Assembly: GCA_977016875.1 (NCBI GenBank)
Contig: CDRNST010000124.1
Coordinates: forward strand, 558,001-622,000
Origin: Pavona decussata
Taxonomy: Eukaryota
DNA: 64,000 nt
Direction: 5' to 3'
Both the position numbers and the translations under genes were made by a program. The notes under the pieces were generated by a model, which was given only the letters and a program-made list of their open reading frames with translations, was not told the DNA's origin and made no database searches. Positions 18,653-58,415 of the stretch are shown piece by piece. Every line of letters begins with the position of its first letter. Within the stretch, counting starts at the first letter, position 1.

Positions 18653-18739
18653 ATGGAACTAAAAAAATCGATGGAGGTCAGCGAACAGGATTCGACGCAG
18701 AGTGGAACTGTAGAAAGCTCCGAAGATCAATTTACTAGG
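18653..18739 (+). CDS. Candidate alternative first coding exon A of the Dmrt gene (MELKKSMEVSEQDSTQSGTVESSEDQFTR)
   Basis: ATG-initiated, 87 nt, donor AGG/gtgagt in phase 0 matching the DM exon acceptor. Acidic, Ser-rich peptide; CpG-rich region upstream (18340-18530). Confidence 0.6.
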
Positions 18740-21700
18740 GTGAGTATGAACAAAACCTTGTTCAATGCAAAGTTATTGAGGTCAATGATCTGCGCTGTTA
18801 TGCATTTGAAAGTGAACAATGGAGGAAATCAAGGCGCGTGCATTTGGTCAATGTAAATGCAATTACAAGGTAACTATTTTAATCCTCGCCTAACTCAGGA
18901 TAAGTTTATAAAAGTTGGGCAATTATTTGCTACAATTCTGAGATGCAGCTGTACGACGGAAGGATTCACAGCTGCCAGGTAAATTATTTTGAAATGGTGC
19001 TGGGAATCTCAAAGTCTTGATGCGTTAAAAATTTATATTGTGTTTCAACTTGGCCTTGTCTCTAAACCATTCATAGAATGTGTGTGATATTTACAGACAT
19101 GCCCTGGGTTTACCTGTAAAATGACCGGCAGGATTATGAAATAACACCACGCTCGAGCAAAGGCAGTTGAAATAAGAAGAGTATTTTTAAGCCTGCAAAC
19201 TAACTTTTAATTATAATCGAGCAGCACCTCGCTTCGCTCAACGGAGTTTGCGAGAAATTGAACAAGTAGTTTTAGTTCGTGAATGGAAAATAAGTACGCC
19301 AAAAGATTACGGTATTTTTCCGAAAGTATGAACAATCGACAAAAATCAGTCGTTTACCGCTAATTACGTTTGTAGATAAAACTTTTCTGTATATTTGAAA
19401 ACCGGAACTAAACCCACAGCATCTCGGGGGCCTATCTGTTAGTGGACAAACATGCATAACTAGAGTTCCTGTCGGACTTTTAAACGGTGTGGTATGCGAA
19501 CTGAATAAACCGGGTTGATTTATCGATAAATCGTTCTGTTTAAAAGGACCAAAAACAAACGCGCAAGTGCGTCACTAAAAACAGCAGCTTGTTTAGTGGT
19601 TAAGCTATACTAATTTTCTGATATTTCATTCAACGATCCCTAATGTTTGACCTTAATTACGTTTCTGACGAATTACTCTTATCTAACAAGTTTACCTCCC
19701 TTGGTCTTCATTTAAGCCGTGTTGAGGTTGTGAATAACTTAATTGTTCATGAATCTTCTTGCTGTGCATTTTAAGACGTCTTGTTCATTGAATTGGGGAA
19801 GATTTTCTGGTGCAAACTGAAGGAATTGTGAATCCTGTTTGGCCCAGGTGGCTATACTAAACTGCTGTGTTTTCCGATAATCTAATAACACTGCGACCCT
19901 TTGCGAGCCTGATATCGTGAGAGAAAAGTCTTCAGCTGGGATCCCATTCAGTTCTTCCAGGCAAGAAGTTTTACGATTTATATGCACTTCTGATATCAAT
20001 ACAGCGTATGGCGCCTATGAAAGGTCACTTTAATTTTAGGATTTTTGCAGTTCTGGCCTTGATAACAACTGACTTTGAATATACTCCATTATTCTTCCCG
20101 TGATCATGATTGTAAGATGTCAGATCCAGTTTATGTAATCTTGATTTATTGTAAATTTATTTAGTTTCAACACTGTTTAAACCAGTGCATCTCAGGACAT
20201 TTCAGTTCTTAGTGAACTCAGGCTGTGAATTACACAAGCAGTTTGTCGCATGATGATCATATCACTGCATCCTAGGCGCTGAGTTTATCAATTAGTTATT
20301 AATATTTAAAAGTAATACTTCTCTTTACTTGTTTTATCCTTTTATCACGATAATCCATTTACAATCCTATCGAACGCTAAACTCTTATATCCGCTACTCC
20401 ATATGCAGACTTGTTACCAGAAATTAGCAACCAGTTAGTTCCAGAAGAGAAACAAAGTGTTGTTGAAGTCACTGAATCTTTATTACTTGTCGGTTAGCTG
20501 GTCAGGTTGATTTCAGTGTCAATTGCTGCTAAATATTCTAGTTTGTGAGAAAAAAAATCCGATTGGCATACTGCAGTCCTCACTATGAGTTGAGTACTGA
20601 TGACTGAGATGAACTAGCATTCTATATCTTGAAGATCAAACCTCCCCTACTGCTTTGAAGGGCTGAGATTATTCAACAATGGAGCTTCTGATATAGCTGC
20701 ACATACATTGTAACCCTCTTGATGTCGATGAATTCATACTGAGTTCAGTATAACTTTTAAAGTCTTGAATATTAGATCTCGAGTTGTCTTAAACAGTGGC
20801 CTGCTTCGATCAAATCACATAGAAAGCACTGAGTGATTCAGCTCACTGATGAAGAAATAACAGTATATACAAAATAGATAACAGATTAATCATGCAGCTT
20901 AAGGATGTAAAACGTCCTAATTAACTACCAAATCAAACTCATTAGTTATTTAGAAAGCTGCTGTACTAGGCTAAGGCCTTAGCAGTCTTTGCGAACTTCA
21001 GGACACTCACCCAACTCCATGGCACATGAACGATGCTCAATGTCTGGTGTCAAAATAATCATTCGTCTTATGCAAGTTATCCAAATAAGAAAACAATTTT
21101 TTTTCATGGAAAGAACAGCCTCCATGATGTTCAAATTTGCAAACGGAACTGCCAGTTCACCTGAAAATGCATGCAACCACTGACCAGGAGATTTTATTTG
21201 AACAGCAACAGCAAGTGGAGTCTTTCCACTTCCATCAGTCTTCGAAGGGGTGGCTGTAAAGAAGCAACCAGTGTGCCGGCGCAGGCTATGAAACGTTCTT
21301 GATCGACCACACAATTGAAAAATTATAACCAGCTTCTATAATAGACACTAACACGTTCTGCTCAGTAGCTTCCATTTGACTGACTCGTCACACTTAAGGT
21401 TTGGATCGGGCAAACTATTACCGAATATCCACTTTGTACAGCAATGATAAACCATGAACGCTCGTGAGCGTTGAAGGAAAATACTAATCCTCCTTTCACT
21501 TGACTAATGTGGTCACCCTTCTGGACTCACTGCACCACGGTTCCAGGTAGACTCACAAGTTTTACTCCAACAGCAAACTCAAAAGTTAGACCCACCTTGC
21601 ACAGCACAATGCAAATTCCCACTGACAGGAAAGCACACTCGATAGTTTTCAAATGGTCAAACTTTGGATTACATCCGTTAGAAATGACTTTTATGATAAA

Positions 21701-22102
21701 ATAGGCGCTTAATTACAAAACTTCAAACGATTTACAAATCATTGAATTTATTGTAGTATTGATTAACTCCTCTGATTATTTTGTTAATAAGCATGCAGAT
21801 GGTTAAGTCCATTTCTTCCTGTGTTGATTTAAGAAACAATTTGTCAGCAAATAATATAATCGATGAAGTTTAATTCTCTTTTCCGCTCGCTTTCGTTTTT
21901 GTGGTACTTTGTGTTTTGTTTCCATAAGTAGCAGAACGTTAGGACTCTTTTGAAGCCTTTGCAATGCTGCAACTATTTATATGGTCATGCAAATAATGGT
22001 TATTGTTGTTGTCATTCGCAGACTCAGAAATTTGTGTGCGTTGACTGTACAGCACAACAAACAATACGGCTGAAAACAGCGACTTTGTACTGCTCCGCCT
22101 TG

Positions 22103-22727
22103 AGGATTTTACCCACAGATATCGTTTTTATTACTTAATTACTGAATAGCTATAATTTGAGTTGCACAGTTAAGGTGTCCTTTCACAGGCTCGGAAGGTT
22201 ATAGCCCCGTTGTACAAGAAAGCAATAACTGATGTAGAAGTTTAGGATTTCATCCATCCGTTGGCTATCGACTCAAAAGTGAGAACCACCATATATGCAG
22301 TACGATAAACAACTAGTACTGCAGCAAAGCATTATTCAATAGCTTTCGTGATCAGTTTCAACCACAGAAATGAGAACCACTATGTATACAGCATAATGTA
22401 CAACTAGTACTGCAGCAGAAGATTCTGCTCTCTTTTCACCAGCTTTCCTGATTTCACCCACAGGATTTTTATTACCCACGGATATCGATTTTATTACTAA
22501 TTAATGAATGGCTATGATTTGAGTCGCTCAGATAAGAAGTCCTTTCACAGGATCAGAAGGTTACAGCCCTCTAGTACAAGAAAGCATTCTGAAAAGCTGA
22601 TGTAGAAGTTTAGGATTTCATCCATCCTTCGCCGGCTAGCGACTAGGAAGTTAGAACCACCATGTATACAGCATGATGAATAACTATAGTACTGCAGCAA
22701 AGCATTATTCAATAGATTTCCTGATTT
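22103..22727. repeat. Two-copy tandem duplication (~360-bp period) containing the 106-bp repeat family
   Basis: The block aggatttt...acccac.gatatcg...gcagcaaagcattattcaatag starts at 22103 and again at 22462. Confidence 0.85.
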
Positions 22728-25700: not shown

Positions 25701-26724
25701 GCAGGACCACTAATGAAACATACTTTGAGATAATAAACTAAAAATATTCCTTATTAAATCTCCACAGTGGTTTAATTCATTAATCCAAGTGATCTTCATA
25801 GAAGGTTCGAGAAAGTAGCGTTGTTTCATAACGATATTGAGAAAAGACGCGTGATCAGCACAACTATGGATCTTTTTTTTTACACTTTAATCAATAAGCG
25901 GTTAATTTTCTTGATATTGAGCCAACTTGATTTCGTGACTGTTCCCTCTTTGTAGCTCAGTTCCTTATCAGACTCCTTATATTGGGCTTAGGACGAGTAC
26001 AGCTATAATTTTTGTTGTGAGGAATGTCACTAATCCCGGTTTAAAAATAAACCAAGTATAATAATAAGCTTGACGTTGAACCACGTGACGGCGACTGAAT
26101 CTCGTGAAGGAATGGGAACGAATTGAGAGAGTCGTTCCCTGATTGGTTTAAACGCATTTCTGCTTGACCGGCGCTCTAAACCAACGCCCTTGTACTACTT
26201 TTATGGCTCCTAAGTTCCTGTCCGATAAATCGCCTGACTCTTTCAATTACCATAATTTGTTTATACAGTTTTAATTTGAAAGAAAGTTTCAGCGCTCCAA
26301 AGGGACCTTAAGAACAAGCATGACGCAAGCGGAAACGACTTTAACTGAATGAATAAAAAAGTTTAGACTTTCTCGCACTTGTGTGACCAGCACGCGCTTG
26401 GACGATCTTTGTGAGTTCAAAGCCACTCAAACTATCAAGAAAAGCGACGAGGATCGAAATTCCTACACGCTTTTGAACACCATTCCTTATGAGGTCTAAT
26501 ATACTCCCTTATACGTTCATCGATGGAAATTGAACTCTGACTCATGTTAACGCTTGCATTTTGTTCCCTTTTGCGTCAGCCTTGTTTTTTATGACGCATT
26601 TACATCCGCTCCGTGGGGTTTGGGATTTGAATTTCCACGCCGTGCATTTCTATCACTTGTAAACAGGGCCCAACGCAGTTTACTTCCATAAATGAAGAAT
26701 GTTCTCAGTGGAAAACTTTAAGTA

Positions 26725-28533: not shown

Positions 28534-28608
28534 ATGGAAGCCGCAGACTGGACCTTTTTTATAAGAAGAGCTGCGGGCAGGAGTAGTTCGGGAAGCAATT
28601 CGTTGACG
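28534..28608 (+). CDS. Candidate alternative first coding exon B of the Dmrt gene (MEAADWTFFIRRAAGRSSSGSNSLT)
   Basis: agaATGG start context, 75 nt, donor ACG/gtgagt in phase 0. Confidence 0.55.
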
Positions 28609-29605
28609 GTGAGTTTGATCCCAGCAGAGCTGTATACCTGTATTGCTGTGCAAATTGCAAGATACGTTTGTCAAATCGGGTATCAAAACAGTTGGTTCTT
28701 TGGGTTCTGCAACGTAGCCTCTGATCCCTGTATTATTCTAAGCCCGCGGGGGAGTTCACTGTTAAAGAATGTCAAACGTAGCTAAAGAACGAGCTGTATG
28801 CAGCCTTTAGTATTAGTTAAGACTGAACTGTTCGATGCAGGTCGTGGCTTTGTTTTTTATCGTTAACACTATTATGTCACAAGATCAACAACATGCATCA
28901 CTCCTTCTTAGCTGACTTAAGCAAAACGTTGTGCTTTTTTGGGAGAGTGGACACGTTCATTGTTCTTATCATGAAAATGAAAATACACACCTGAGATCAA
29001 CTTAAATTAGGGATTGTATCATCTGATACAAGAAGAAAACACTAAATAATCTCAACTTTGAATTCTTACGTAATGCCACTTAACAATTTCCTTGAAAAAC
29101 GGAGTGATGGAAGGTGAGTTATATAATTAACACGGGAACGGATCACTCCAAAAGAATGTTATTAAGTCGTCTTTTTTGGTGGAGCTTCATAACATTAGAA
29201 AATATGGAACGTTCGTTCGTTCAAACTAGTTATAGCTAGTTCTTGGCTTGACGGAGGCAAGCTACAACTGAGCATTGTTTGCAAAGAGATAATCTTGTGA
29301 TGGCATTTACATAGTTTAAGGGACTAATGTTAAGAAGGTGATAGCAAATAAACTAATTTAGATACAATTTTTGGCAGTTTGACCGTCGAGATTTGACATA
29401 GTTTGGATGAGGAAGTGAATAAATAATTCGCTAGTTGGATGGGGAGCTCGGTAGTCGCACTATTTGTTGGTTAGGATGTCAAAGTAATGCACACTTTGTT
29501 AGTTTGAATAATGAGTTAGATACACGATTTATCAGCTTAAGTGATAATTTTAGATACACAATTTGTTAGTTTAAGTAATGAGCTAGATGTATCATTTGTC
29601 ACACG

Positions 29606-30110
29606 AAAATTTGGTTGCATAACTGAATCGATAATGTCCGTTGGCCACCGTACACAAAGCCAAGAGCAAACGCTTCGGGCGCTCACCCTTTGTCGTAGCA
29701 CATAAAGGAATTCTGTGTTGTCAGAGGTGGTTTATCAATATATCGAAGGGTGTAGCATAGCTATTGGTGTAAACAGGGTATCGTGAAAAATGAAAATAAC
29801 TTAGTTGGAGGAAAAGCTTTCTTCAATCCCAGTTGGGACTTGACTGTCGATTTTACAGCTTTCGTGCTCAGGTGATGCAGGGAACGGCAACAGACTTCCC
29901 GCCACTAACGATGCGTTCGTTAGTAGATTGGTTCAGGGTAGGTAAAAGTGTTGAGCGACTCGTTTAATCTCGTCTTTGTCTTTTCTCTAAATGTCTCGTA
30001 GATGTTCGCCAAAACGCTTTCCTGGTCTCCCTCCTTTCGCCGATCTGATTAATATATCTTTCAACAAAATGCAGGTTTTGCAGTTGTTAACATTTGAAGC
30101 GGTCCATTCA
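29606..30110 (-). mobile_element. Decayed Penelope-like retroelement 3' part (GIY-YIG endonuclease remnant plus pLTR)
   Basis: Minus-strand translation contains GKRFGEHLRDI*RKDKDEIKRVAQHFYLP and PTGIEESFSSN*. This is followed by a decayed hammerhead-type segment gctacgacaaagggtgagcgcccgaagcg and tacggtggccaa. Confidence 0.8.
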
Positions 30111-37087: not shown

Positions 37088-37326
37088 AGGCTGGTTTCCA
37101 TATGATCGCGGATCGCAGATCGCAATAAGGTCTGCGATCGTCTGCGATCATATGGAAACCAGCCTTTAGATAGAACATGGTTCTATCTTCTGCGATCGTC
37201 TGCGATCGCGATCGCAGGATCGCAGACGATCGCAGAAGTAGTTTCCATAAGATCGCAGACGATCGCAGGGCAGACCTTATTGCGATCTGCGATCTGCGAT
37301 CCGCGATCACATATGGAAACCAGCCC
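37088..37326. mobile_element. Harbinger-type MITE rich in gatcgc subrepeats
   Basis: TIR aggctggtttccatatg / catatggaaaccagcc. TTA at 37085-37087 and 37327-37329; an extra internal right TIR ends at 37165. Confidence 0.85.
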
Positions 37327-39900: not shown

Positions 39901-39909
39901 ATGTCCGAG
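39901..39909 (+). CDS. Candidate alternative first micro-exon C of the Dmrt gene (MSE)
   Basis: ttcaccATGTCCGAG/gtaaga: good start context and strong phase-0 donor, but short enough to arise by chance. Confidence 0.35.
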
Positions 39910-42029
39910 GTAAGAAAGACGAGGTAAAAGCCCGTACTAGATGACGGAAATTTGTGAACTCTTGCGAAAGTTATGAAAAATAACTTTTCTGTTTTAATAG
40001 TTCCATATTTTCAAGTGAGTACCCTGTTAAAACTTGGCTTCTTAACCACTCAAGTGCTCGTAGCTTTCATTCTTTATTATAATTGCTTTTTAAGTGAATA
40101 TTTACAAAAAAAAAAAAAAAAACAGCAACAAAAATATAAACAACTTCAACTACAACAACAACTGAACAAAACAATGTTGTTTTTTAAACAACTCAATGTA
40201 TTGGCCCTTTCACTTGCGGAGCTCAGGCTTGTTCATAATGATTTTAAACTTGTCCACAATACAATCATTTCTTCAATTATTGTTCAATTCTGATATCGAA
40301 TGAAATAAGATTAACACTGGTCTCTCTCGGTCTCGTCTCCACCATCTTTCTCTCGCTACAATTCGGCAAACGAAGGAAAACTGTGGTTTTGTAATCTGTC
40401 CTTTTTCGTTAGACTAGAGCTACTTTCAATTCTTGGTATACTCATGCAACTCGAAATAGCAAATCTGAGCAATGAACACAACTATCACTGTCGATGAGGA
40501 TCAGCAATGAGCATTCACTGTCTTATTGTCGAGTTTCTTTGCCTCTATACAAGAAAAACACCATCAATGTATACGGGTTTTGCTAATTTCAATGTGGAGT
40601 TTTCATTAGTGTGAATAGTTTTCTGCCTTAGTACGAGTTCTGAACTTTTAACTTCATTGGCAAAATTCAGAAAAAGATCGGGAGGGTGTTTTTCACAAAG
40701 GACTTTGTTCTTAAGCAATATATCATCTTATTTGTTAATTAAAGAGGATTTTGAAATACTTTTCAGAACAAAAGCTAGCGATGAATTTAACGAACAACGT
40801 TAATTATTTAAGCAGAAATGACACAAAAGCATTTGGATGTTATATGCAATATAATGAAAACTTAAATTAACGATGGACAATTTGTCATCTTCATGTCATT
40901 ATTGCCAAGTTGAAATGCAACAAAATCTTGTGGCTGTTATATGCAATATAACATATAACACCAGATCAAGCGAAAGCCCCGGCTTAACGCGCGAGAGTAA
41001 ATAACTCAACAGGGAAATTGTCCGATTAAATGATTATGTCTAATCAGGAGCGCGTGTCGAAGTTAACAAATCCCTGAAAGGCTCTGAAAACATAAATCAC
41101 ATTGTCACCATTGAAATACAAAAGGTATTTGAGATTGACGTAGCGATCAATACCGCCGCGTCGTCGTTATTTGCTTTATAATACAGAGGATGAAATTCGC
41201 TCAAAACTAAAAACTACCACGAGTTTTGAAGATGTTTCCCTCCCGCTTTTTTTTATTCACTAAAACCACGCATCAACAACACAGGGAGGGTATGAGAAAT
41301 CTGTATTATTAGCGATATTTCCCAAAGGATTTTTTCACAAAACCGCTTTCTTGTGCGTAAGACTTAATGATGATGACACGTCGAAGCCTTCGAAGGAGCA
41401 AAGTCTTGTACAGACTTAAAAACCATTAGTTTTTGCTTGGCCTCTCTGTTACATTAAAAGGTTGATTCGGTGCTTTTTGCTTAGGCATGTATCACAAATT
41501 CGTCCAAAGAGATAACGATAATTGCTGGTGAAATTTCAATAAGTGTAAATCCTTCTTAACACCCGAGAGAATGGAATCACATTTAACTGTTGACGTTCAA
41601 TCCACCTTTGAGAGAAAATATTGTAAAAGAAAAGGCAGTTAACGACTCTGCCCCATGACCCAGACGGGATACTCAAGTGTACAGTTTTTGGTAACTTTTA
41701 CGGCAAGGGTCCTCATTCCAGCAGCGCAGCATTGATGCGGTATTTGGCTACCTATCGGGAATGTCTAGTTTTTCCATCTGGAAAAGGCGAAGAATTTGTA
41801 ATGGCCCACATATCAGGTTACTGTCTTGCGAACGCCGATTCCCTAGCTGAACTGTACGCTAAAGGTGGTCGATACGTTTAACAAGATACTTTTGAATGGA
41901 ACGGTCCCCACGCGTTGTTACTAAATAGAGAGATGTAATTGCTGTGAACGCTCTTACGCCGTGTGGGAGCGGTTTTTTGGTTCATGACCGGGTCGTTCAT
42001 TGTTCAGCGTGTATTTAAAAACAATGACA

Positions 42030-42073
42030 TCACCTTATAATGAACGTATCTTCACCTTATAATGAACGTATCT
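42030..42073. repeat. Perfect 22-bp tandem duplication
   Basis: tcaccttataatgaacgtatct occurs twice in tandem. Confidence 0.95.
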
Positions 42074-44061
42074 TTCAATAACAGTAGCCATGTTACCTGA
42101 GTTATTCTAGTATAGTAGCATCAGTGGTGAAGCGATTTTAACACTTTATTAGTGGGTAGAGTGATTTTCGTCCTGGAGAACTCGGATAGGCAATCAGTAG
42201 TTCTACATATGGTGACCTGATAACAGGCCAGACAGCCCTACCGCCTGACGAAGATTAGAAACAGTTTGAACGTCGCCATGTACATCCTATATATTAAAAT
42301 CGTCAAAAATTCCGAGCTTTTAAGTAATGGAATTATTTAATTGTCTCTACCGCGGCGCTGTGGAGTAAATATTGAAGCTTTTAATTTATCGTTCAACGCG
42401 CGTTATACACTTCGCCCAGGTGCAGTCACTGCAACCTAAAAATTCACTTGCCTCAATATTCAAAAATGAGTATCAATATATTTTTCTCAGGCATTCCAGA
42501 AATGAAACATGATGTGTAGGCTTCTGGTTTGGCGTTGGAGGTTACGTTTTGTAATCAAGGTTCAGTCATATGTCAGCGTTAACAAGAATTTTTGTTCTCG
42601 GGAAGGCTTATGACACCTTATTAGTGAATATGGTCATTTAATTGCTTTTAATATTGTCACGCAGCGTGAGAGTTAACACAGTTGCTTATTAAACAAGAAA
42701 TGGGACGATTTAACGCAGAGTTTTTGCGCTTAAATATAGGCGAATGGGGGAATGATCATATATCGATCATAGGAAGCCCGCCGGAACTAGCTAGCGTGTT
42801 CGATATATTGGCGCTAAACTGTATACATTTTGATTGTCGTGTGCTAGACAAGCCCTAAGGCTAAAAGATGTTAACACTTACAATCAGTAGTTTTCTAACA
42901 CTTAGCACTTCCGAAAACAAAACCAAACTGCTAAAAACTTTAAGCAGTCGTGTTTTGTTGTGGAGTAATCCTTTTCCTTACATTGGCGCAACAAAATGCT
43001 ATACTCAGCAATACTAAATTTCAAAATACCAGAAAATTCATGGTCCATGCATGAAATTGTGCATAATGATAGCAATAACTTCAAGGTCGGACTCAATATC
43101 AGCCATTGCGTGCTTAATCAATCTTGTTCATTATCTGATATCACGCATAGGGCGAGACAGAACTTTCCAGTTGTCACGCTATCGACGGGCAAAATTTTTT
43201 CCTGCAAAATTCCAAGCGACAACTATCTAAACAAACAAATCACCAAAGATCTGCTGTAACCCCAAACAAAACGGAATTTTGTAGCTAGTGATATTTCATG
43301 ATGTCTTTTGGCGACCTGCTCGAGAAATTTTTGCTGTAGAAATGAACTTTCTCGCGCGTGACTTGCGCTGCAGTGCATGTTGAACAGCTTAGAGCAAGCC
43401 TAGGTGATATATGTTGACAATAAATATACATATCCTGTATCGAAATAAAAGTAACTCTGTAACAAATAAACAAATAAGTATCTTCTGGAATCGTGCTAAG
43501 CCGGCAAAAGCCTATCAACGGATTGAGCTCATTTCGTTTTGCAAAAATAGTAGACTTCATGATCTATCAACAGCAGAATTAACGATTTCTGGAAACAACT
43601 GTTATTGCTTGTTCTATACGTTGCCCACTGAATGACTCATTCATCAAACTCGCAGTCGTGGGAGGACTGGATTGTTTTGTTAGTCTCACGCCTGTTGGCT
43701 CGGTCAGGTGTTATTAACGCATTCAACGCCACACGAGCGGTCAGTGTGAACAAACGGCGCGCCATTTCCATTGACGTAAATCAGACGAAACTGGCCATCG
43801 GTTTGTTAAACTGTTAATGGGAGCAACCGGCCATCCGCGAAAGAAGCAGCTTGCTTCTTCTTAAAATAGCACGAATTATTTTCGGAACGAATTCAGAACA
43901 ATAGAACAAAGCCATAACAGCACAATTAGAAACGTTGTCAAAAGAATTTACTTTGGATTAAAATAGCAGACGAGCCGAGTAGGGGCTGACAGCGTAATTC
44001 GAGCGTGCCGACAGTGTGTCCTGGAGACGCCGTTAAACGCGACTCCCGTCAGATAATTGCG

Positions 44062-44130
44062 ATGGCTGCTGAGGAGGGAACGTCTTCTGCTAATGAAGCG
44101 TCAGATGCTACGTCAAACAGATCCGCAATG
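44062..44130 (+). CDS. Candidate alternative first coding exon D of the Dmrt gene (MAAEEGTSSANEASDATSNRSAM)
   Basis: gcgATGG start, 69 nt, donor ATG/gtaagt in phase 0. Ala/Ser/Glu-rich N-terminal peptide; CpG-rich leader at 43690-44060. Confidence 0.7.
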
Positions 44131-47100
44131 GTAAGTTAAAGCAGTTTGAACTTCGTTGTTTCATTAGCTATTATTTTTCAGACATCCCTGGTGCTCTGCG
44201 CATGTGGCAACATGTCGAACTGTACTGCCTTGAGTAAAGCGACAAAACCTCATCTCATTTAGCTCAATATTGCATCTAAAGACACCATAGTTAGTGTATT
44301 TATCCACATTTTATGAAAATCAACATTCTACAGTTAGTTTGGTTTGATGATTTGATCTCGCATCGTGTTTAGACAACATGTTGGAAAGTTAAAATGGATG
44401 ACACATCCGGGCAAAACAACTGTTCCCAGCAATTATTTGATTACCCGGTATCTCCATGAAATGTTATGCAAGACTAATGTGCGACTCGACCTCGCTTTTT
44501 CTGAAACACTTACTAATTTAAAAAAACTAATTGCATCATTAAAATATTGAATTTTCCTTAATGTGAGATAAAATCTGCGAAATCAGGCGTAAAGCCATGC
44601 CCCATGAAGACAATGTGCCCATGAAAGTACGTTCGGAAACCAGTCGAAATTTTCACATTTTACAATTGAACTTTCGGTTTTGATAGGCTAAAAGGAAGCG
44701 AAATTTTTGTGGAGAGAATATTCCATCGAAGAGTTTATGTTACCTCTCTTTTACGCCCCGAAACATAAGAACCTTCATCTATTCCCCGCCTCCGCCGGTG
44801 ACAAAGAAGAGAAAAGGATATGTCATCTACGAATTCATGTCGGTTAAGATGCCTCACGAAACATTAATTTCTCAAAAAGGCCGGTTGTGCCCTTGACCAC
44901 TGTATAACATAACATAAAGGATATGTGACAGGCCCTAAGGATATAGGGTCAAAGAAGTGGAATAGACGCTGAAAGGCTCAATCTCTTGATGGAAGTAAGT
45001 TACAAGTTCATAATTCGAGGATACAAGCATAGGCAAGCCTTGTCGTCCGTCTGCCGTAAATAGGAACGTTCGAGACTTAGTGAACGTCTAGAGATTTGAA
45101 AACCATATAACCCTCCATCAAAGCATTTGGAAGAAATACTGGTGAGTTTACGAAGGTAGAGATAACCATGCACTGATTTCTGATTAACATAATTTTTTAT
45201 CAGGTATGAACTTAAACTATATACCATGTTGTATTCGAACCAAAGACCAATCTCACAATATACCACCGGCTTTGACAACTCTAATTTCTTCAAGACCTTC
45301 AAAAGATTTCGTAACACAAGTGGCCCTATTTCGAGGTACGGAAACTGCCAAGAGCATTTCGTTTTACTCACCTCTTGATTTTGGCAATGCTCTTATTATT
45401 TTGTTTTTATTTTTCATTTTTCGGAAACCACAATCTATGCGTGTGGTTCTACATGGATCAACCGTGATGATAGCGGCCAAACGACGAAAACAGGAGCATT
45501 GAACTGACAAACTCATGTACAAAGATCGCAGATGGTTGTTTCAAGTTCAGATATCAATAGAGCGTTAGCGTTATTCGGTGGCCATGTTACATGAACAGGG
45601 GTAGTTCTAAGCCAAGCGATATTCACAATAAACATGAGTTCACTTCAGCTATCGACTGTATAACAACTGAGGCAGGTTTTGCTGAATAACAGCCTAACAG
45701 TGTTAAGAAGTGGGCAATCGCCGACCAACTGAATCAGAGATACTTGTAATAAATGGACTGGCATTTGCTAAAAACTCAACAGAATTGCGTGTGTGCTTAG
45801 AGATTTCGCTAGACTAATGGTTTGCAACCTGATTGCCGACGGAATTGTCAATACTCCCGCAAGTCAGGTAAAACAGCGTACACATCCGTCGCGGCTCGCC
45901 AATCAAAATAACACCAGGAAGTCCATCGATCGGCAAAGCTGTTGAGGGCAACAAAATCCCTTTTTTTTTAATGTAAAGATATCTCTACATTTTTTTCTAC
46001 GAGACAACCATAATGACGGGTGGAAAATCCCATGCCCATTGGACCGTATAAAACTTTCGATCCTCTCACTGGGCTCATATGCTCTTCGCCGTTTTGCAGG
46101 GGATGGCTTAAAATGTACCACTTGAAGGCCCTGAGAACTCACGCACAGTACCACTGTACTAGTGAAAAAGGCTTTTATTAAGTTACTTATCGTCGTTTTA
46201 GAACTCCTTTCGACGAATACTTAGCTGCCTGATGTCCAAGAAGCCTCACTCAATCTCTGTCCAGCTCTTCCGTCTTATAGTTTGTGTCAAAGACGTTAGG
46301 TCTAAAATGTCGCGGTTTGATACATGAAGGATACGAGAAAACAAGCAAAACGCCCTGATCTGATGGAATACTGATTGTTTTGAATTTCTCGCGGATATAA
46401 ACAAACTGTCGTTTTTAATCGGTAGCTGCTGGAACGTTGTTGAGCCGTGAGCCGTACAGTTTTGTTTGGTTTAAAGCTTAGCTATGTTTACTACTGCATT
46501 CCAGATATAGTAAAACTCTTTGGATGTACTTTAACAAGAGTGTTATGTTACCATGCTTTTTTAAGGCCTCTATTTCCAGCTTGTTGTTTAGACCTTTTAA
46601 AGACGGAGCTCTTAGTCTTGTCAGCTTTTCATTTCAACTTCATTTGGTGGTTAGTTCTGCCTTTTCAATTATAAGGTGATCACTATCGCTCAACCAAGAA
46701 TATTTCAATGTGTCTAGAACTCTAGAGTCATATTCTTTGACGGCGAGGCCGAACACATCAAGTTTAAAAACAAGAGCTACCAAAGGGTTACGTTTTGTCC
46801 GACTATAACTACAACATTTGCAAAACTAGTCTGCCCTCACTCCAATAACCTAGAACAACCAGAAGTTTGCAAACGCCTTTCCAGAGCCTTTCTATCGTCC
46901 AAATTTTGTTTCCTTGTTTGGATTTCTGGGTCATTACCGGCTGATGGCTGGCCCAAACAATCTAAGTAATTATTTCGGTACGTACAAGCTTGGATCACGT
47001 TTTTTCTAACGATATGAGGTTGTTTTTCAAACGACCTTGACCAATGATAGACGGTCCAATATCATACCCGACAAGATGACAAGAAGAGTATCAGTGTTTT

Positions 47101-50450: not shown

Positions 50451-50474
50451 ATGTGTGATTTAGATTTCTTAAAG
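50451..50474 (+). CDS. Candidate alternative first coding exon E of the Dmrt gene (MCDLDFLK)
   Basis: 24 nt ending in a consensus donor AAG/gtaagt, phase 0. TATA-like ttataaat (50285) and ggtataag (50327) upstream. Confidence 0.5.
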
Positions 50475-51107: not shown

Positions 51108-51695
51108 ATCAACTTATGGTATCGCACTGATTTTAATATTCCTCTTAGCCTACTTTATTACTAGAAAATAGAGAACGTCTGAGAAATCTAGGACCAGTTA
51201 TTTAAATGAAGATCATACGGGGTTTAACAAACCACGATATTAACACATTTCAATCTGGCCATCGCGTTCAGCTAAAGGTTTGTAAACAGCGTGAAGAACG
51301 GAAACGATCAACTTATGGTATCACAATATGAATATTCCTCTTAGCCTACTTTATTACAAGACAATAGAGAACGTCTGAGAAATTTAGGACCAGTTATTTA
51401 AATAAAGATCATACGGGGTTTAAAAAAACTACTGTCTTAACCCATTTCAATCTGGCCATCGCGTTCAGCTAAAGGTTTGTAAACAGCGTGAAGAACGGAA
51501 ACGATCAACTTATGGTATCACAATATGAATATTCCTCTTAGCCTTCTTTATTACTAGAAAATAGAGAATGTCTGAGAAATTTAGGACCAGTTATTTAAAT
51601 AAAGATCATACGGGGTTTAACAAACCACTGTCTTAACCCATTTCAATCTGGCCATCGCGTTCAGCTAAAGGTTTGTAAACATCGTGAAGAACGGA
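51108..51695. repeat. Three-copy tandem repeat, ~197-199-bp unit
   Basis: atcaacttatggtatc at 51108, 51307 and 51504; units are highly similar. Confidence 0.95.
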
Positions 51696-53364
51696 CACAG
51701 CCGGTGACTAGAGACGCATTTATCTACTTAATATAACCCACTTATAAAACAGATGCACAGTTCCGCATTGATTTTCTTAAAACTATGGCTTTCAAATTCA
51801 ACTTTTAGCTTTATTACTTCCGTCAGTTTTATAGCAATACAATTCATAATTTCTAAGCAAAGTTAGACTTCGTTGAAACAACTGACTCTCAAGGTTTTAT
51901 AACCGTTCGAATCAGTTCAACACTGAAACCACAATTGAAAACAAATTTCGTGAAAGAAGCATTACTGTTAATCTCCCGGTCTAGCCGAGATTGCATGTTA
52001 CCAGGTTTCGTAAACGCCTAGTAAGTATCCTAAAATGAGACCGGACGTAGCAAAAAAACAAACATTTCCTGACGTCTAAATCGCTCAGCTTAGTGTCTAA
52101 GTCAAATAGTCCAAACTCCGTAACACTCTAGGACACTAGTGATCAATAGCATACACTTCAATGGACATACTTCTGTGATATCAGCTCAAACGTCAAACAA
52201 TACTTACAGTAACCGCCATCACTGAAGTGTTCAATAATTTGGGTTTACAGTGCATGAATGATTGAAATAAACTTAAGGAGGGATAGCTTCAGAAAAACAC
52301 AAGGCCACAATGGTTTAGGAAAAAACAAAGCATTCTTTAATTTTGACATGTTTTGACGGTATTTCCTACCCAAGCATCACCAGAATTGAGAAGTTGAATT
52401 TAAAGTACCTGCCTGGGGCTGTTTGTGATAGAAGTTCATACTTTCGAAGGCGTGTCAAGAAAGCCATTAGTGCTTTGGTTGTTTACATCGATCCAATCTT
52501 AAATCATTCCCTGCTATCAAGGCATTCTGAAAACACGACGATTTTCAATTCATCCAGCTATTACTTCGTCTTGTGAGCACAACACTCAAGATTGGACTGA
52601 AGCAATTTCAAAATTGAGCTTGAAGAAACAGTGGAGTTTTAATTTTAACCAAGACAAGTGTGATAAAGTTCAATTTTTTCCTGAGACGTGACTAAATAAA
52701 TCTATTCCAAAGGATAAAGCTGTATTAATCTAATTAATAACAGTTTTGCTTCAGAAAAGTTTGCCGCCCGATAAGAAATGTCTAGAGCATTGATTAAATA
52801 TCTTTGAGGTAAATAGGGTTATAGCTGAAGAAGCATGAATTGAATTGTTTAATTGTAGCTCCTTCAGGCGTTTTTAAGTCACGGAAAAACATTCCGCTTC
52901 AGTGAATTGAATTTTGTAACTAGAAAACAAGTTAAGGTAAGACACCAAATTCGTTTCCATTTAGTTCTTTGCAGAAACAGGTTAATTATCTCCTTAAAGA
53001 CAGTGTGTTTTATGCGCAATTTTTGGCGGGAAACTATTTCGCGACTACGCATCGGACTAAATCCAGGTTAATTGCCCGGTTTGCCATGGAAGTAATTAAT
53101 GTTATTTTTCAATTTTTTAGGATTGTTAAATTAGTTCTTTCCTATAACAAGCCTTTTAATGCAGTGCAACGATTTAGCTACTCTGCAAAGTCGACGAGTG
53201 AAATCCTGAAGTTCAAGCATTAAAATGAAAGCAGTGCTTCCCTGAAGTAGAGTCGGTTTACCTGGAACTTCCAGGTGGAACGTAAAATTTTGTCGACCAT
53301 TCAACTGAACTAAAGCAGCGCTTTCGTGTATTGGTGTTAATTATACTAAAGAAGGTGCATGGCA

Positions 53365-53762
53365 CTATCACTGTTAATTTCGAACTCCTTAAAATCCTCT
53401 CCAATATTCAAACGAAAGCAGTACTTTCCTGTGATGATGTTACTGTGTTATGCAAGGTGCTACTAAAGTTACTATCAGTTGTAGGTCTGTGGATGAAATC
53501 CTTATGTGAAGCTAGCCTCAAATAAAGCCATTGAGAAGTGGAACGCGGTTGCTTTTGAGCGCTATCACTGTTAACTTCGAACTCCTTAAAATCCTCTCCA
53601 ATATTCAAACGAAAGCAGTACTTTCCTGTGATGATGTTACTGTGTTATGCAAGGTGCTACTTAAGTTACTATCAGTTGTAGGTCTGTGGATGAAATCCTT
53701 ATGGGAAGCTAGCCTCAAATAAAAGCCATTGACTGAGTAGTAGAACGCGGTTGGTTTTGAGC
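53365..53762. repeat. Two-copy tandem repeat, 197-bp unit
   Basis: ctatcactgttaa.ttcgaactccttaaaatcc at 53365 and 53562. Confidence 0.95.
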
Positions 53763-54410
53763 ATGTGGACGAAATTCTCAAGTGTGACCGTTCAAATGAT
53801 TATGAAAACTACTTAGCAATACTTTCCTGTGGTTCAGCTCTTTATACTGTACAAGGTAGTTCTAAAGTTTTTGTGGATGAAGTTCTGAAGTATAAACATT
53901 CAAATTAAAGCTACTGAGCAGTACTTTCCTGTGGTATAGTTCACTGTGCTGTACAAGGTGGTTCTCACATTTTAGTCTGTGGATGAGGTTCTAATTTGTT
54001 ACCATTCAAATCAGCTACTGAGCAGAAATTTTGCTTTAGCCCTGTGTGTTATCCTGTACAAGGTGGTTTTAACGTTTTAGTCTGTGGACGAATTTCTGCA
54101 AGTGTGACCATTCGGATGAAAGCTATTGGGCAGTACTTTCCTGTGGTGCTGTTTATTATGCTGTACAAGCGGGTACTAACTTTTGACTCAGTGGATGAAA
54201 TTCTGAAGTGTGACCATTCAAATGAAAGCTTCTGAGCAGTACTTTGCTGTGGTGCTGTTTATTATGCTGTACAAGGTGGTTCTAACTTTCGAGTCTCTCG
54301 ATGAAATCCTAAACTTTGACCATTCAAATGTAAGTTACTGAGCAACACTTTGCTGTGGTTTAATCTACTGTATCTGTGAATGAAACCTCGTCGTTTTGTC
54401 CATTCAAATG
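53763..54410. repeat. Tandem array of a 106-bp interspersed/satellite repeat
   Basis: gtacttt.ctgtgg at 53921, 54133 and 54239 (106-bp period). Related copies lie at about 790-990, 5630-5690, 21570-21680, 22240-22730 and 58790-59080. Confidence 0.88.
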
Positions 54411-57400
54411 AAATATTTAGTTCTTTACCCAGAAGTGTTATTGGCTGTTCAAGATTTTGCAGAATGGATTCTGGGAATTTTACTCAGTTTCAAATTGGGC
54501 GCCGTTGACACAGAAAGACTGAAGGAAACACTAACCCACAGAGAATACAGTTCCAGTTGTCTTGCTGAGTCTATAATTACCAGGACAGATGACCTTTTTT
54601 TTTATTTTTAAAAACTCCCAGTCGAGCAAGAGTTGCTCAAAATCCCAGTGCATGTGAGCATTCAAATGGAAGCAGTTAAGTATTCTCTGCGATGCCCTGC
54701 TTTTGTTTCTCTGCTTAGATATTGTGTAAAATGAATGATACTTTTAAGATTTTGCCTTTGTGACTTAATTAAGAAACGGCATTGAACTTTGCCTAAGAAA
54801 TCTTGCGAAATCTTGCTAGAAGTTGTGGTCTTTAGGTTATCGCATAAATTTTTAAACACTCCAAGGAGACAGTTCTTCGCTTCCATTGAAGGCAATTTGA
54901 ACACAAACTCAAGCCGAGCAATGACGCACTAACAGCAGCTGACGTTTACGCTCTAAACGAGAAGACAAAGCAGATTGGGCGTAAAAGTTAAATTTAGATT
55001 GTTAACGCTGTGCTGCAGAACTAAATAAAGGGTATAGAATCTAAGATTAACTTGGATTGTTAGCAACTGTACACGACAAATGACCACCCGTTGGAAGTTT
55101 GCGTCACTGTAAAAACCTCAACATAGTTGGATCAATGGGAGGGACGCCTCGGTGTTGAGTAACTTTTACACACAAAGAAACCTCGTCCGACTTGCTATAG
55201 CTAATAATAGCTGCGAGGGATCCCACTCAAGTTAATCAGTTCAACGTTTAATTCACGCTGAGTTTACAATTAGTTATATTATGTCTCCTTTCTTCAAGTT
55301 GACGCACAAACTACAAACTTGAACAAATACGGTCAAGCCAATTCATGGTCACTGCGATTTCGCAATGCTAGTGATCGCGGGAAAATGGCTGACCAACCAA
55401 ACCACAGTCTTGACTAGGTGATTTGAGCTTTGTGTTCTTAGAAATAGTTATGACAGATTTGTTATGGTTTTGGCAGTTTTTATAGGGTAGATAAAGGATT
55501 GTTTTATGGACCATGGGGCTTCTGAAGGGCACACTGAATGCATAGACAAATCGTGTTAGTTACGTTTTGACAGCTTTCTTTTTGTTTTTCGTTTTTTTAC
55601 AATCGTTTTGTCATATTTACTAAATTCTATTAGATGGAAGAGTATCTCTCGTCAGGAAAATGAAAATACAACAAGATGAATCATCGACAACTTCTTAAAT
55701 ACCATTGGCAAGGTTAATTTAAGTTTTCCGTCATAAAATAACAAACTGTTCTTTGTTGTTTGCAACTCCTCGGGGGGGCCACGTGCAAATGTTTCAAACT
55801 TTATTAAAGGGAGTCCAGTCATCAATACCGTTTCCATACCCCGCGGGGCAACAATAGCTTTATATAAGATATTCATTTATAACGTTCCATTGTGATTTCT
55901 CAGTTGACCTTTGTTGAACTTTTATTTACACTTCTTGGACCTATAAATGTTGCATTATTTTACTGTGGTAAGAAAATTGTTTCCAATAACTTTTCCAAGG
56001 ACGAGTAACACACACTTGGTGTGAAAAGAAATTCAGTTTCTTACTTTACCCAGTTTGCTGTCTTCTTCTCCGCCCTAGATTTTAAAACTAATGGTCAACT
56101 AAACCTCTTCTCTTCGCTTCGTAATTAAGTTTTTTTTCTGGCCACCCTTTACCGGCTTCGTCGAAGCGTTAAACTTTTAAAACGCCACTATTGTAGTGTT
56201 TTTCTTTCGAAAAACGCGCGTTCTATATTTGTTTGACATGTCTCTAGCCTTTAGATCACAACATCTTTGTTCTAAACAGGAAGAAAAACATTTTGAGACC
56301 TTGCTTAAACAAAACCGGGACTTGCTATCCACGAATTGTGTCACTTGTTCAACGACAGGTTTTTCACGCTGTCATAGCAACAGCGTGTAGTAGACCTGTT
56401 TGTTTTGGCTAAGGAATTTGCGAGAAATATTCATTACCAACCTTGACCTCAGTGGGCTTAGATTTCTTACGTAGTAGTGTAGTTATTAGTAACAATAGAT
56501 TAGTAGTTTTTGGTTAAACAGTAGCACCGGAATATCGCCCAGCCAAGCAAAGTGGAGTTTTACACGGTAAAATTATTCCATTCTCTTTCGTTTCTTTAAA
56601 TTTCACTTCTTGTCTAAATTAATGTTATTTTGCTGTTATGCTCGGCTGGTCTACTGTGTTCATCCCAGCGATGTTGTTCTTTAACAGACAAAGCCGGTCA
56701 GTTTCAAACGTTTCGCTTTTCTCAACACGCAAAGTACAACATGGACTAAAAAATGAAAAGGGTAAACAGGAAGATATCAGCTTTTTACATTTTATGCGTT
56801 AACTTTGTACATTATAGTTTCCTTTCTAACAAAGTAATTGAAATCTGTCATTTCCTTTATTAATAAGTAATTGTAAATCACTAAAATTTGCAACATTGAC
56901 TGACAAGGGAGTCTTTTCTCAGGATTCGAAGAAATCAGTGCCTTTGACGAGAAGAAAAAAAAAATGTCAAAGTTAGTCTCAACCTTTACTTTACACCGGT
57001 GCGAAGTGATTTTTGTTTGGACGTTAAAAACTTTTATTCGGCGAAATAATCGGTTGACTTTGTATTTAAATGGAAGTTTTAAATCGTCACGTTTTTCATA
57101 CCATAAATATCCCTCGACCATCGATCAAATTACGTTTTCACGTTCAATTGTCGTGACATCGCCCGAGCTACGAGTTATTCGAGACATTCAAGAAATTTCT
57201 ATTTTTAAGTCACACCCTTGCAAATTAATAGACATTTTTGTGGTTGCAGGACAGTGACCGTGAACAATAAAGTTGCAATTTTCTTACCAATTCAACTTAA
57301 AAATAAATTCAATAGGGGTTGCTAAATTTAGCCAGCTTTCAAGACCAAAATAGCACTCTCAAGACTTTGAACCGAATCGGCCAAAGCAGGATTTGCCTCA

Positions 57401-57973
57401 AACTAGCTGTTCTGAGCGTGCAAAGTGATTTTCAAAGAGAAAACTTGGTTACCCAAACTGTTTTAACAGAATACAAGGTATAGACGGCCACTTTTTTTCT
57501 GTCTTTCAGGCTCGTGCGCCCAAAACTCAATGAACTGTACTTGTTACAAGTTGTTGCGTTCAGTTGAATCAAATTAACTGATTTTATCTGTCGCGTTTTG
57601 TTTGGTACCTAACGGCAAAAAAAGTCTGAATGTAAACGTTTGCTGGTGACGAAATGTCTCAGTCTTTTTACGGCTAAATGGTCTGAGTTAAGTCATTCAA
57701 TGTGCTTCACAAGTTTGACTCTATCTGTAGAAAAATCTTATGAAAGTGCGATCATTCAAATCAGTGCCATTGTCCCGCTGTTCGACTTGGCGTTTTCTTT
57801 TCAAAATGGAAATTGTATAAGTTTGTCAACTTTGTACATTTACTATACCGGACGGAGGCATGTTTGCCTGTCCGCAGTGTGTTTTTAGGGTCTCAAGCAC
57901 ATCGATGCAACCATATCACTTTTAATTGACTTTATCGAATGCCAGTAACAAAATGCTGTTGGTTTTCTTGCAG

Positions 57974-58415
57974 CCTTCATCAACGGAGATCAAGCCCACT
58001 CCAATGCCACCAATGGGTTCAATAACACAGCGATCTCCTAAATGCGCCCGCTGTAGAAATCACGGCGTCATCTCGATCCTCAAAGGCCATAAACGGTTCT
58101 GCAAATGGAGGGACTGTGCATGCTCAGATTGCAACCTTATTGCCGAGAGACAGAGAGTCATGGCTGCCCAAGTTGCGTTGCGAAGACAGCAAGAAAGTGA
58201 AGAGGCCGGAGGCCATATTCCATACAACGCGGTTCAGTTGTGTCATTACAGTTCAAACATGCACAAACCATCGAGGATTATTCCTCCTTCTCCAACCTCT
58301 CCTAAAGAAGGGCAGCTAGCGAGAACGACGAGTATGTCCTCGCGATCAAGTTCACCTGGTAACGAAGAAATGGGAAACGGTCTTGAATCTCCAGCGAGTA
58401 GCGCAAACGAGAGCG
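57974..58415 (+). CDS. dmrt: DM-domain exon of a doublesex/mab-3-related transcription factor
   Basis: [54 protein letters not shown] (58031-58192) is a canonical intertwined CCHC/HCCC DM domain followed by a Pro/Ser-rich region. Acceptor ggttttcttgcag (phase 0); donor GCG/gtgagt at 58416 (phase 1). The paralog cannot be assigned by eye. Confidence 0.97.

What the first reader, a model, noticed from the sequence alone, without database searches (positions are those of the whole stretch)
18653..58415. Candidate variable-first-exon array feeding one Dmrt DM-domain exon
Seen: the DM exon has a clear phase-0 acceptor at 57974. Over the 39 kb upstream lie separate ATG-initiated segments, each ending in a strong phase-0 donor: 18653-18739 (AGG/gtgagt), 28534-28608 (ACG/gtgagt), 39901-39909 (GAG/gtaaga), 44062-44130 (ATG/gtaagt) and 50451-50474 (AAG/gtaagt). 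None has an obvious upstream acceptor, and several follow CpG-rich or TATA-like sequence. Known: Dmrt genes control sexual and neural development, and promoter choice diversifies Drosophila fruitless, Daphnia dsx1 and the vertebrate protocadherin/UGT1 loci. Inference: this anthozoan Dmrt may use several promoters, each adding a different N-terminal peptide to a constant DM domain, possibly by sex, cell type or stage.
Basis: partly seen in the sequence, partly recalled or inferred. Interest (0 to 1): 0.85.

Follow-up and report, generated by a model that had tools for sequence, protein, structure and literature searches.

The report
Coral Dmrt gene with many first exons
A coral DmrtA-type transcription-factor gene has at least six conserved alternative first exons spread over 39 kb that all feed one DM-domain exon, as database gene models of other corals already show but no paper we found describes.

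Summary

- **Supported (four of five):** A (18653-18739), C (39901-39909), D (44062-44130) and E (50451-50474) match N-terminal peptides of isoforms of the orthologous gene in Acropora, Montipora, Porites and Oculina. Each of those peptides is joined directly to the same PSSTE[IL]K start of the DM exon.
- **Synteny:** A, D and E keep their ATG, frame and donor at collinear positions in Porites evermanni.
G (about 44693-44994, "ME|GTAAGT") and the non-coding F (56442-56566). Both are spliced to the DM exon in RNA contigs of relatives.
- **Unsupported:** B (28534-28608) has no match anywhere. About six such segments are expected by chance.

In this species, RNA contigs from four studies cover only 57973-58415, splice on to the DMA exon, and stop exactly at the acceptor. 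One contig continues 475 nt into sequence that lies outside 53000-57972. Which first exons are used here could not be read.

This is an ordinary multi-promoter design (like BDNF or NR3C1, not protocadherin-like). It is conserved across stony corals and already present in RefSeq isoform lists. Use by sex, tissue or stage is untested.

The parts
17087..18308 (+). Conserved non-coding blocks upstream of first exon A (likely distal promoter or regulatory region)
   Evidence: Four blastn blocks, 71-77% identical to Porites evermanni L005 8417-9651, just upstream of its A exon.
18321..18739 (+). First exon A. The 5'UTR starts at or before 18321. CDS 18653-18739 (29 codons, MELKKSMEVSEQ..SEDQFTR), donor AGG|GTGAGT.
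   Evidence: RNA contigs of relatives align collinearly over 18321-18735 and then jump to 57973 (L011, L012, L004). The peptide matches the N-termini of P0261/P0264 (86-89%), P0002, P0004/P0207/P0212 (Porites), P0154/P0198 (Acropora), P0272/P0275 (Montipora) and P0224 (Oculina). Each is the best hit in the window and ends at the donor. pN < pS against three species. CpG o/e is at the 95th percentile.
28534..28608 (+). Candidate B (25 codons, ACG|GTGAGT): unsupported, probably a chance match
   Evidence: No similar N-terminus among 41 distinct N-terminal peptides of relatives. No match in the Porites locus at E<=1. CpG at background. Single copy in the genome. About 6.4 such segments are expected by chance.
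39901..39909 (+). First exon C, coding part only (MSE, GAG|GTAAGA); exon start unknown
   Evidence: Identical to the N-terminus MSE|PSST.. of Acropora muricata isoform X9 (P0193) and Montipora isoform X11 (P0277). Expected number of MSE|GTRAG in 39 kb is 0.003, and of MSE|GT 0.13. Not detectable in Porites DNA. Single copy.
43039..44130 (+). First exon D with its conserved upstream block. CDS 44062-44130 (23 codons, MAAEEGTSSANEASDATSNRSAM), donor ATG|GTAAGT.
   Evidence: Blocks 43039-43217 and 43378-44147 are conserved with Porites L005 27793-28921. ATG and donor are conserved, and the only indel in the coding part is 6 nt (alignment A1). The peptide matches P0152/P0209 (Porites), P0156 (Oculina X1), P0197/P0205 (Acropora) and P0274 (Montipora), each joined to PSST... 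pN 0.12 against pS 0.62. CpG o/e at the 94th percentile.
44693..44994 (+). Mostly 5'UTR, CDS 44989-44994 (ME), donor GAA|GTAAGT. The conserved block 44481-44598 just upstream is a likely promoter element.
   Evidence: A Porites RNA contig (L015; P0220, MQ|PSS..) maps to L005 29592-29929 and then to the DM exon at 43674. Its 5' exon aligns to window 44735-44916 (73%). The ATG-plus-one-codon-plus-GTAAGTTA end is conserved. Block 44481-44598 is 82% identical to Porites.
50451..50474 (+). First exon E, coding part (MCDLDFLK, AAG|GTAAGT); exon start unknown. A conserved CCAAT-containing motif lies about 170 nt upstream.
   Evidence: Matches Acropora muricata X6 / A. palmata X4 (MCDLAFFK|, 6 of 8) as the best window hit, ending at the donor. 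Also matches Porites lutea X3 (..MHDLDTCK|) and resembles Oculina X4 (MADLYDFPK|). Its Porites counterpart lies at L005 37238-37303, between D and the DM exon, with ATG and donor aligned.
56442..56566 (+). Non-coding, no ATG, donor ACG|GTAAAA. Transcripts from it would start translation at 58004 (MPPMGS).
   Evidence: Five RNA contigs from five runs of the closest relative (L006-L010) align to 56442/56465/56543-56566 and then to 57973. That relative is the same species as the A-type contigs (99.7% identity over 1200 nt). The region is conserved with Porites L005 41981-42212, where isoform X4 (MFIFNLDPFAK|) begins. No depth at 56400-56599 in the four runs of this species.
57974..58415 (+). Constant exon 2: shared acceptor, conserved internal AUG at 58004, DM domain, phase-1 donor
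   Evidence: Pfam DM 1.1e-24. RNA contigs of four runs from four studies cover 57973-58415 at depth 36-182, against 0-3 in the flanking introns. They run on into AATTTCCGATGG.., which is the start of exon 3.

Best explanation
The window holds most of a three-coding-exon DmrtA-type gene (DM domain plus DMA motif). A 39-kb region upstream of the DM exon carries an array of alternative first exons. In order these are A (18.3-18.7 kb), C (39.9 kb), D (44.1 kb), G (44.7-45.0 kb), E (50.45 kb) and F (56.44-56.57 kb).

Each first exon is presumably transcribed from its own promoter. Each ends in a donor that splices to the single acceptor at 57974. A, C, D, G and E carry an ATG in phase 0, so they put 29, 3, 23, 2 or 8 different residues in front of [16 protein letters not shown].. 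and the DM domain. F has no ATG, so translation would start at the conserved internal AUG at 58004.

Exon 3, which holds the DMA motif, lies 8.3 kb past the DM exon and outside the window.

- Shown: the exons exist and are conserved. The same exon types are spliced to the DM exon in relatives. The acceptor and the exon 2 donor are used in this species.
- Inferred: each first exon has its own promoter, several are used in this species, and the choice sets where, when and how strongly the gene is expressed. The A and D peptides are probably also translated and functional.

B is most likely a chance match.
For: **Gene model**
- cDNA contigs of relatives align as 18621-18739 | 57973-58411 | L003 2723-3548.
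- Exon 3 has the DMA motif.

**Isoforms in relatives**
- Counts: Acropora muricata X1-X9, A. palmata X1-X7, Porites lutea X1-X7, Oculina patagonica X1-X6, Stylophora X1-X5, Montipora up to X12, Nematostella X1-X4.
- All stony-coral isoforms differ only before PSSTE[IL]K.
- An independent GenBank annotation of Porites harrisoni gives A-type, D-type and internal-start models.

**Mapping to the window**
- A-type and D-type peptides hit 18653/18671-18739 and 44062-44130 with E 1e-5 to 1e-12. These are always the best hit and always end at the donor.
- E matches MCDLAFFK. C equals MSE.

**Synteny in Porites evermanni (L005)**
- A at 10001, D at 28830, G at 29592-29929, E at 37238, F at 42005, DM exon at 43674. 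This is the same order as in the window.

**Real RNA contigs, not only gene models**
- A-type: L004, L011, L012. F-type: L006-L010. G-type: L015.
- A and F occur in one species.

**Coding constraint**
- D has pN 0.12 against pS 0.62 and a 6-nt indel. A has pN 0.09-0.22 against pS 0.31-0.60.

**This species**
- Contigs of X2, X7 and X10 end exactly at 57973.
- X1 record 6 continues 475 nt beyond the acceptor. No depth lies anywhere in 54400-57799 of X1 except 1.45 at 56600-56799, so the partner exon is more than 5 kb away.

**Nothing else in the intron**
- Intron ORFs have no Pfam match and the region has no Rfam match, so no other gene claims these exons.
Against: - No junction from any individual first exon to 57974 was read in this species.
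- Contigs ending at the acceptor could reflect one spliced form plus unspliced precursor. X7 has a low-depth unspliced contig at 57656-58001.
- F shows no depth in the four runs laid.
- C rests on three residues plus a donor, and it is not detectable in Porites.
- Most cross-species support comes from automatic gene models.
- The pN/pS values rest on only 23-25 codons.
- Promoters were not tested at all.
Confidence: 0.8

Rival explanations
1. In this species there is a single distal promoter. Only exon A is spliced to the DM exon. D, G, E and F are conserved intronic regulatory elements, or relics of first exons that are used in other corals but not here.
For: Only one long spliced continuation was seen (X1 record 6, 475 nt). 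Its length fits an A-type 5' exon of at least 419 nt. F has no depth in the four runs.
Against: ATG, reading frame, phase-0 donor and peptide sequence are retained at D, E, G and C. Enhancer function alone would not preserve these. Contigs break exactly at 57973 in three of four runs. The closest relative uses both A and F.
Confidence: 0.1
2. The DM exon is itself the first coding exon, driven by a proximal promoter and translated from 57953 or 58004. The upstream ATG-donor segments are chance matches.
For: In-frame ATGs lie at 57953 and 58004. Several database proteins start at MPPMGS (P0001, P0005-7, P0151), or read through the acceptor (P0003, P0176-8). Chance alone gives about 6 such segments.
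Against: RNA contigs start or stop exactly at 57973, and depth upstream is 0 in three of four runs. The MPPMGS-start transcripts of the relative carry a spliced non-coding exon F. A, D and E match real N-termini. The read-through models come from genomic or unspliced contigs.
Confidence: 0.04
3. The segments are consecutive internal exons of one long transcript, or they belong to other genes nested in the intron.
For: Montipora isoform X1 (P0274) joins exon A to an acceptor just upstream of the D start codon, so D can serve as an internal exon there.
Against: In every other isoform the peptides are mutually exclusive and are joined directly to PSST... In the window, the frame upstream of the D ATG holds a stop (SRG*QR). 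No other protein or RNA family is found in the intron.
Confidence: 0.03

Closest known systems
[quoted passage not shown]
   Same: Same gene and same acceptor. The same first-exon types occur (A, C, D, E, F-region, G). Same three-coding-exon body with DM and DMA. A second Dmrt gene lies in tandem downstream in Porites as well.
   Different: Those are automatic annotations of other species. No paper found in the searched library describes or interprets the array. Several of their types (for example MAQIGSPKHPG.., MAAAQDLELF.., MPLHKFG..) have no detectable counterpart in this window.
Multi-promoter genes with several 5' exons spliced to one common coding exon, such as vertebrate BDNF and the glucocorticoid receptor NR3C1 (from general knowledge, not tested here)
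   Same: Many short, unrelated 5' exons spread over tens of kb. Each presumably has its own promoter. All join one acceptor. Some are non-coding and some add a few residues.
   Different: Here at least two of the added peptides (A, D) are conserved and appear to be under purifying selection, so the protein N-terminus itself may matter.
Clustered protocadherin and UGT1A variable-exon loci
   Same: Promoter choice links one of many upstream exons to constant downstream exons.
   Different: In those loci the variable exons are tandem paralogues, each encoding a whole functional domain. Here the exons share no similarity and encode 0-29 residues.
Alternative 5' ends in sex-related genes: Drosophila fruitless P1-P4 and Daphnia dsx1 alpha/beta
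   Same: A developmental transcription factor whose 5' end varies through promoter choice. dsx1 is itself a DM-domain gene.
   Different: No sex-specific or tissue-specific use has been shown here. The number of first exons (at least 6 here, up to about 10 types in Acropora) is larger.
AmDM1 of Acropora millepora (Miller et al. 2003, as summarised in PMC10194864 and PMC4433094)
   Same: A coral DM+DMA gene reported to give two transcripts.
   Different: The reported variants are DM+DMA against DMA-only, not alternative first exons. Orthology of AmDM1 to this gene was not tested, because no sequence was in hand.

Membership tests
DMRT family, DmrtA-type (DM + DMA) | DM zinc-module DNA-binding domain | tested here: met
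   PF00751 86.5 bits (cut-off 27), residues 20-66 of exon 2.
DMRT family, DmrtA-type (DM + DMA) | DMA motif C-terminal to the DM domain in the same transcript | tested here: met
   PF03474 59.5 bits in exon 3 (L003 2726-3538, outside the window). RNA contigs of X1, X7 and X10 run from 58415 straight into the first letters of exon 3.
Multi-promoter gene: alternative first exons joined to one acceptor | Two or more distinct 5' exons that are mutually exclusive in transcripts | tested here: met
   Met in relatives: 4-12 isoforms per species differ only in the N-terminal peptide. RNA contigs of A, F and G types exist. The corresponding exons are conserved in the window.
Multi-promoter gene: alternative first exons joined to one acceptor | All of them splice to the same acceptor in this species | tested here: inconclusive
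   The acceptor at 57974 is used, and contigs break there in three of four runs. One contig continues into a distal exon. The partner sequences were not shown.
Multi-promoter gene: alternative first exons joined to one acceptor | Each first exon has its own transcription start or promoter | not testable with these tools
   Contigs cannot show starts. The hints are indirect only: collinear 5'UTRs without introns, conserved upstream blocks, a conserved CCAAT-containing motif before E, and raised CpG at A and D.
Multi-promoter gene: alternative first exons joined to one acceptor | Differential use by tissue, stage or sex | not tested
   Run metadata are coded and only contigs were available.
Protocadherin/UGT1A-type variable-exon cluster | Variable exons are tandem paralogues of one another | tested here: not met
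   All-against-all blastn of 600 nt around A-F gives only 11-22 nt chance matches.
Protocadherin/UGT1A-type variable-exon cluster | Each variable exon encodes a complete functional domain | tested here: not met
   The coding parts are 29, 3, 23, 2, 8 and 0 codons.

The most novel reading that the evidence does not exclude
The array of six or more (up to about ten) alternative promoters and first exons of this DmrtA gene is an ancient feature. It would have been conserved since before the complex/robust split of stony corals, and perhaps across Hexacorallia, since Nematostella DmrtA2 also has four 5' variants. Its conserved acidic, Ser/Thr-rich N-terminal peptides (A and D types) would give the DM protein promoter-specific activities. 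Promoter choice would differ between germline or sex and neural or other somatic cells. That would be a cnidarian route to sex- or cell-type-specific Dmrt isoforms through the 5' end, rather than through 3' splicing as in insect dsx.
Probability: 0.3. Interest if true: 0.65.

Novelty: new member of a known kind. Interest (0 to 1): 0.5.

Why it matters
Dmrt genes are the one gene family repeatedly tied to sexual development across animals. How cnidarians regulate them is barely known. The Nematostella expression paper states that no splice variants were detected (PMC4433094). The coral literature found here mentions only a DM+DMA against DMA-only pair for AmDM1 (PMC10194864).

A conserved array of at least six first exons gives concrete, isoform-specific targets for qPCR, in situ probes, reporters and CRISPR deletions. 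These could test whether promoter choice tracks sex, gametogenesis, larval neurogenesis or tissue in corals.

There is also a practical warning. Expression studies that count this gene as one transcript, or primers placed in exon A, will miss most isoforms. Ab initio models that start at MPPMGS, or that read through the acceptor, are incomplete.

Tried and rejected
- **Same-species proteins.** None was in either protein collection. The best hits were 91-95% identical, so same-species isoforms could not be read that way.
- **Loci by exact product.** The look-up of encoding contigs found no record for five proteins: P0154 (A. muricata), P0198 (A. palmata), P0274 (Montipora) and P0250 (A. cervicornis). 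No acroporid genomic DNA was therefore available to test C by synteny.
- **P0001.** It gave only a 2.2-kb unspliced contig.
- **Metagenome scan.** An exact scan of metagenome contigs for the start of the DM exon found nothing.
- **Loose end at 56731 in X2 and X7.** This looked like another exon junction. Its letters map to another contig (C334:2716823), so it is a shared short repeat and not part of this gene.
- **Segment 54222-54329.** This extra ATG-donor segment lies in a satellite-like repeat and was discarded.
- **B against 10 unplaced N-terminal types.** Local alignment with shuffles gave nothing at p<=0.05.
- **MLFFN at 56671.** It has no donor in frame and was rejected as the counterpart of Acropora MLFFNL|. 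The F region itself (56427-56447, IFITNLD, ATG lost) is the better counterpart.
- **Earlier scan notes.** Those near the window or matching Dmrt words gave nothing relevant.
- **Joined spliced protein.** It was never built or searched.
Full report
**Observation**

The window is G000:C124:558001-622000 of a 602-Mb assembly.

The DM exon is real. It has a polypyrimidine tract and CAG acceptor before 57974 and a GTGAGT donor after 58415. Its 147 codons are open and give a Pfam DM hit of 86.5 bits.

The pattern by itself is not strong evidence. Using the same three donor hexamers, I found 13 ATG-open-phase-0-donor segments on the + strand of 18-58 kb. Markov-shuffled sequence gives 6.4 +/- 2.4, and the minus strand has 4. 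The exon also has in-frame ATGs of its own, at 57953 and 58004. So the finding had to be decided by outside evidence.

**Gene model**

An exhaustive protein search with exon 2 gave relatives of two kinds:
- some start at MPPMGS, which is position 58004;
- others carry 23-36 extra N-terminal residues.

P0002 is encoded on a 4-kb RNA-seq contig of a related coral (L004). That cDNA aligns to the window as 18621-18739, then 57973-58411, then to L003 2723-3548 beyond the window end.

The gene therefore has three coding exons: A, the DM exon, and a DMA exon (Pfam DMA 59.5 bits). Intron 1 is 39.2 kb and intron 2 is 8.3 kb. Candidate A is the conserved distal first exon. RNA contigs of the closest relative run collinearly over 18321-18735, so the exon is at least 419 nt long and has no intron in its 5'UTR.

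**The other candidates**

A word-indexed search with the full-length relative and a cluster look-up showed that the orthologue is annotated with many isoforms:
- Acropora muricata X1-X9
- A. palmata X1-X7
- Porites lutea X1-X7
- Oculina patagonica X1-X6
- Stylophora pistillata X1-X5
- Montipora up to X12
- Nematostella X1-X4

In all stony corals the isoforms are identical from PSSTE[IL]K onward and differ only in what precedes it.

| Type | Window peptide | Counterparts in relatives |
|---|---|---|
| A | ..SEDQFTR | Acropora, Montipora, Porites, Oculina and two unnamed species |
| D | MAAEEGTSSANE.. | Acropora, Porites, Oculina, Montipora; probably Stylophora (MATEDG..) |
| E | MCDLDFLK | Acropora MCDLAFFK, Porites ..MHDLDTCK, Oculina MADLYDFPK |
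| C | MSE | A. muricata X9 and Montipora X11, both exactly MSE |

The chance of an MSE|GTRAG in 39 kb is about 0.003, and of MSE|GT about 0.13.

B matches nothing.

**Synteny**

The Porites evermanni locus (L005) holds the whole array. Positions are A 10001-10087, D 28830-28904, E 37238-37303 and the DM exon from 43674, the same order as in the window.

- At D, the ATG and the ATG|GTAAGT donor align, the only coding indel is 6 nt, and similarity drops after the donor.
- At E, the ATG, the donor and an upstream CCAAT-containing motif align.
- B and C have no match in Porites at E<=1.
- Substitutions are biased toward synonymous sites. D has pN 0.12 against pS 0.62. A has pN 0.09-0.22 against pS 0.31-0.60, window against three species. 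The numbers are small, but they fit translated, constrained peptides.

- **F (56442-56566, donor ACG|GTAAAA, no ATG).** It is the 5' exon of five RNA contigs from five runs of the closest relative, and it is spliced to 57973. Those contigs are 99.7% identical in the shared body to the A-type contigs, so one species uses both A and F. The F region is conserved in Porites, where isoform X4 begins.
- **G (about 44693-44994, ATGGAA|GTAAGT).** It is the counterpart of the Porites MQ| exon. A Porites RNA contig (L015) maps to L005 29592-29929 and then to the DM exon, and its 5' exon aligns to window 44735-44916 with the ATG and donor conserved.

**This species**

Fourteen small runs (about 130-180 Mb of contigs each, probably RNA) hold the exon. 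I laid four of them, from four studies, on 53000-58999.

- Depth is 36-182 over 57973-58415 and 0-3 in the flanking introns.
- Three runs run on from 58415 into the first letters of exon 3.
- Contigs of X2, X7 and X10 begin or end exactly at 57973.
- In X1 a 522-nt contig has 47 nt on the exon and 475 nt that lie nowhere in 53000-57972.

So the acceptor is used, the partner exon is more than 5 kb upstream, and the assembly graph branches at the acceptor. The letters before 57973 were not among the loose ends shown, and only one laying call was allowed. Which first exons are used here therefore remains unread. F had no depth in these four runs. An unspliced low-depth contig in X7 means that the branching alone does not prove several partners.

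**What it is and is not**

The intron holds no other recognisable gene or RNA family.

The first-exon regions are not paralogous, and they encode 0-29 residues. That fails the defining features of protocadherin/UGT1-type clusters. The architecture is that of an ordinary multi-promoter gene (BDNF- or NR3C1-like, from general knowledge).

The most likely mechanism is that each first exon has its own promoter and regulatory inputs. This is inferred from the conserved blocks at 17087-18308, 43039-44147, 44481-44598 and 56356-56899, and from raised CpG at A and D. All donors compete for one acceptor. The result would be promoter-specific expression, with either a short variable N-terminus or, for non-coding exons, the MPPMGS start.

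**Novelty**

The isoforms are already in RefSeq and GenBank for other corals. I found no paper describing the array. The Nematostella study reports no splice variants (PMC4433094). For AmDM1 only a DM+DMA against DMA-only pair is cited (PMC10194864).

I rate it a new member of a known kind and of moderate interest.

The joined spliced protein was not built or searched. Exons were handled one by one by reference.

Noticed in passing
window 53800-54400: A satellite-like repeat. The first look found more than 3000 candidates in the genome. Tandem arrays with copies starting about every 106 nt, or multiples of it, lie on C248:75000-87300. Summed depth in the RNA-like contig sets is about 5000-41000. 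The many 'joints' and loose ends in this stretch come from it.
   Followed up: partly
L003 7863-8027 (G000:C124:629863-630027, 13.8 kb past the DM exon, outside the window): A second DM-domain exon on the same strand, so there is a tandem Dmrt paralogue. The same tandem pair (a second DM+DMA gene of 444 aa) follows the orthologue in Porites evermanni (L005 50789-59505). The genome has 16 DM-domain matches in all.
   Followed up: partly
window 55157-55368, 55721-55989, 57230-57356: Non-coding blocks in the last 3 kb of intron 1 are conserved with Porites (67-81% identity; 55721-55989 is the strongest at 81%). No transcript evidence explains them. They could be enhancers or further first exons.
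   Followed up: no
window 56731-56795: A short piece expressed at depth of about 6-13 in the runs. Its upstream continuation maps to another contig (C334:2716823-2716852), so it is a small dispersed repeat rather than part of the Dmrt gene.
   Followed up: yes
window 7730-8344 (minus strand): A 204-aa ORF whose DNA (7761-8201) is conserved with the PAN/apple-domain gene that also lies upstream of the Dmrt orthologue in Porites evermanni (L005 1-1030). The neighbourhood is therefore syntenic.
   Followed up: no
L003 2732-3541 (exon 3, outside the window): Many database proteins of 260-280 aa (P0159-P0170, some from RNA-run contigs) consist of exon 3 alone, with only the DMA motif. AmDM1 is reported to have a DMA-only transcript. 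There may be an internal promoter in intron 2, or these may be just single-exon ORF calls.
   Followed up: no
window 43978-44061: Montipora isoform X1 (P0274) splices exon A into an acceptor upstream of the D start codon, so that A and D peptides occur in one protein. In the window, the corresponding frame has a stop codon, so this combination would not be productive here.
   Followed up: partly
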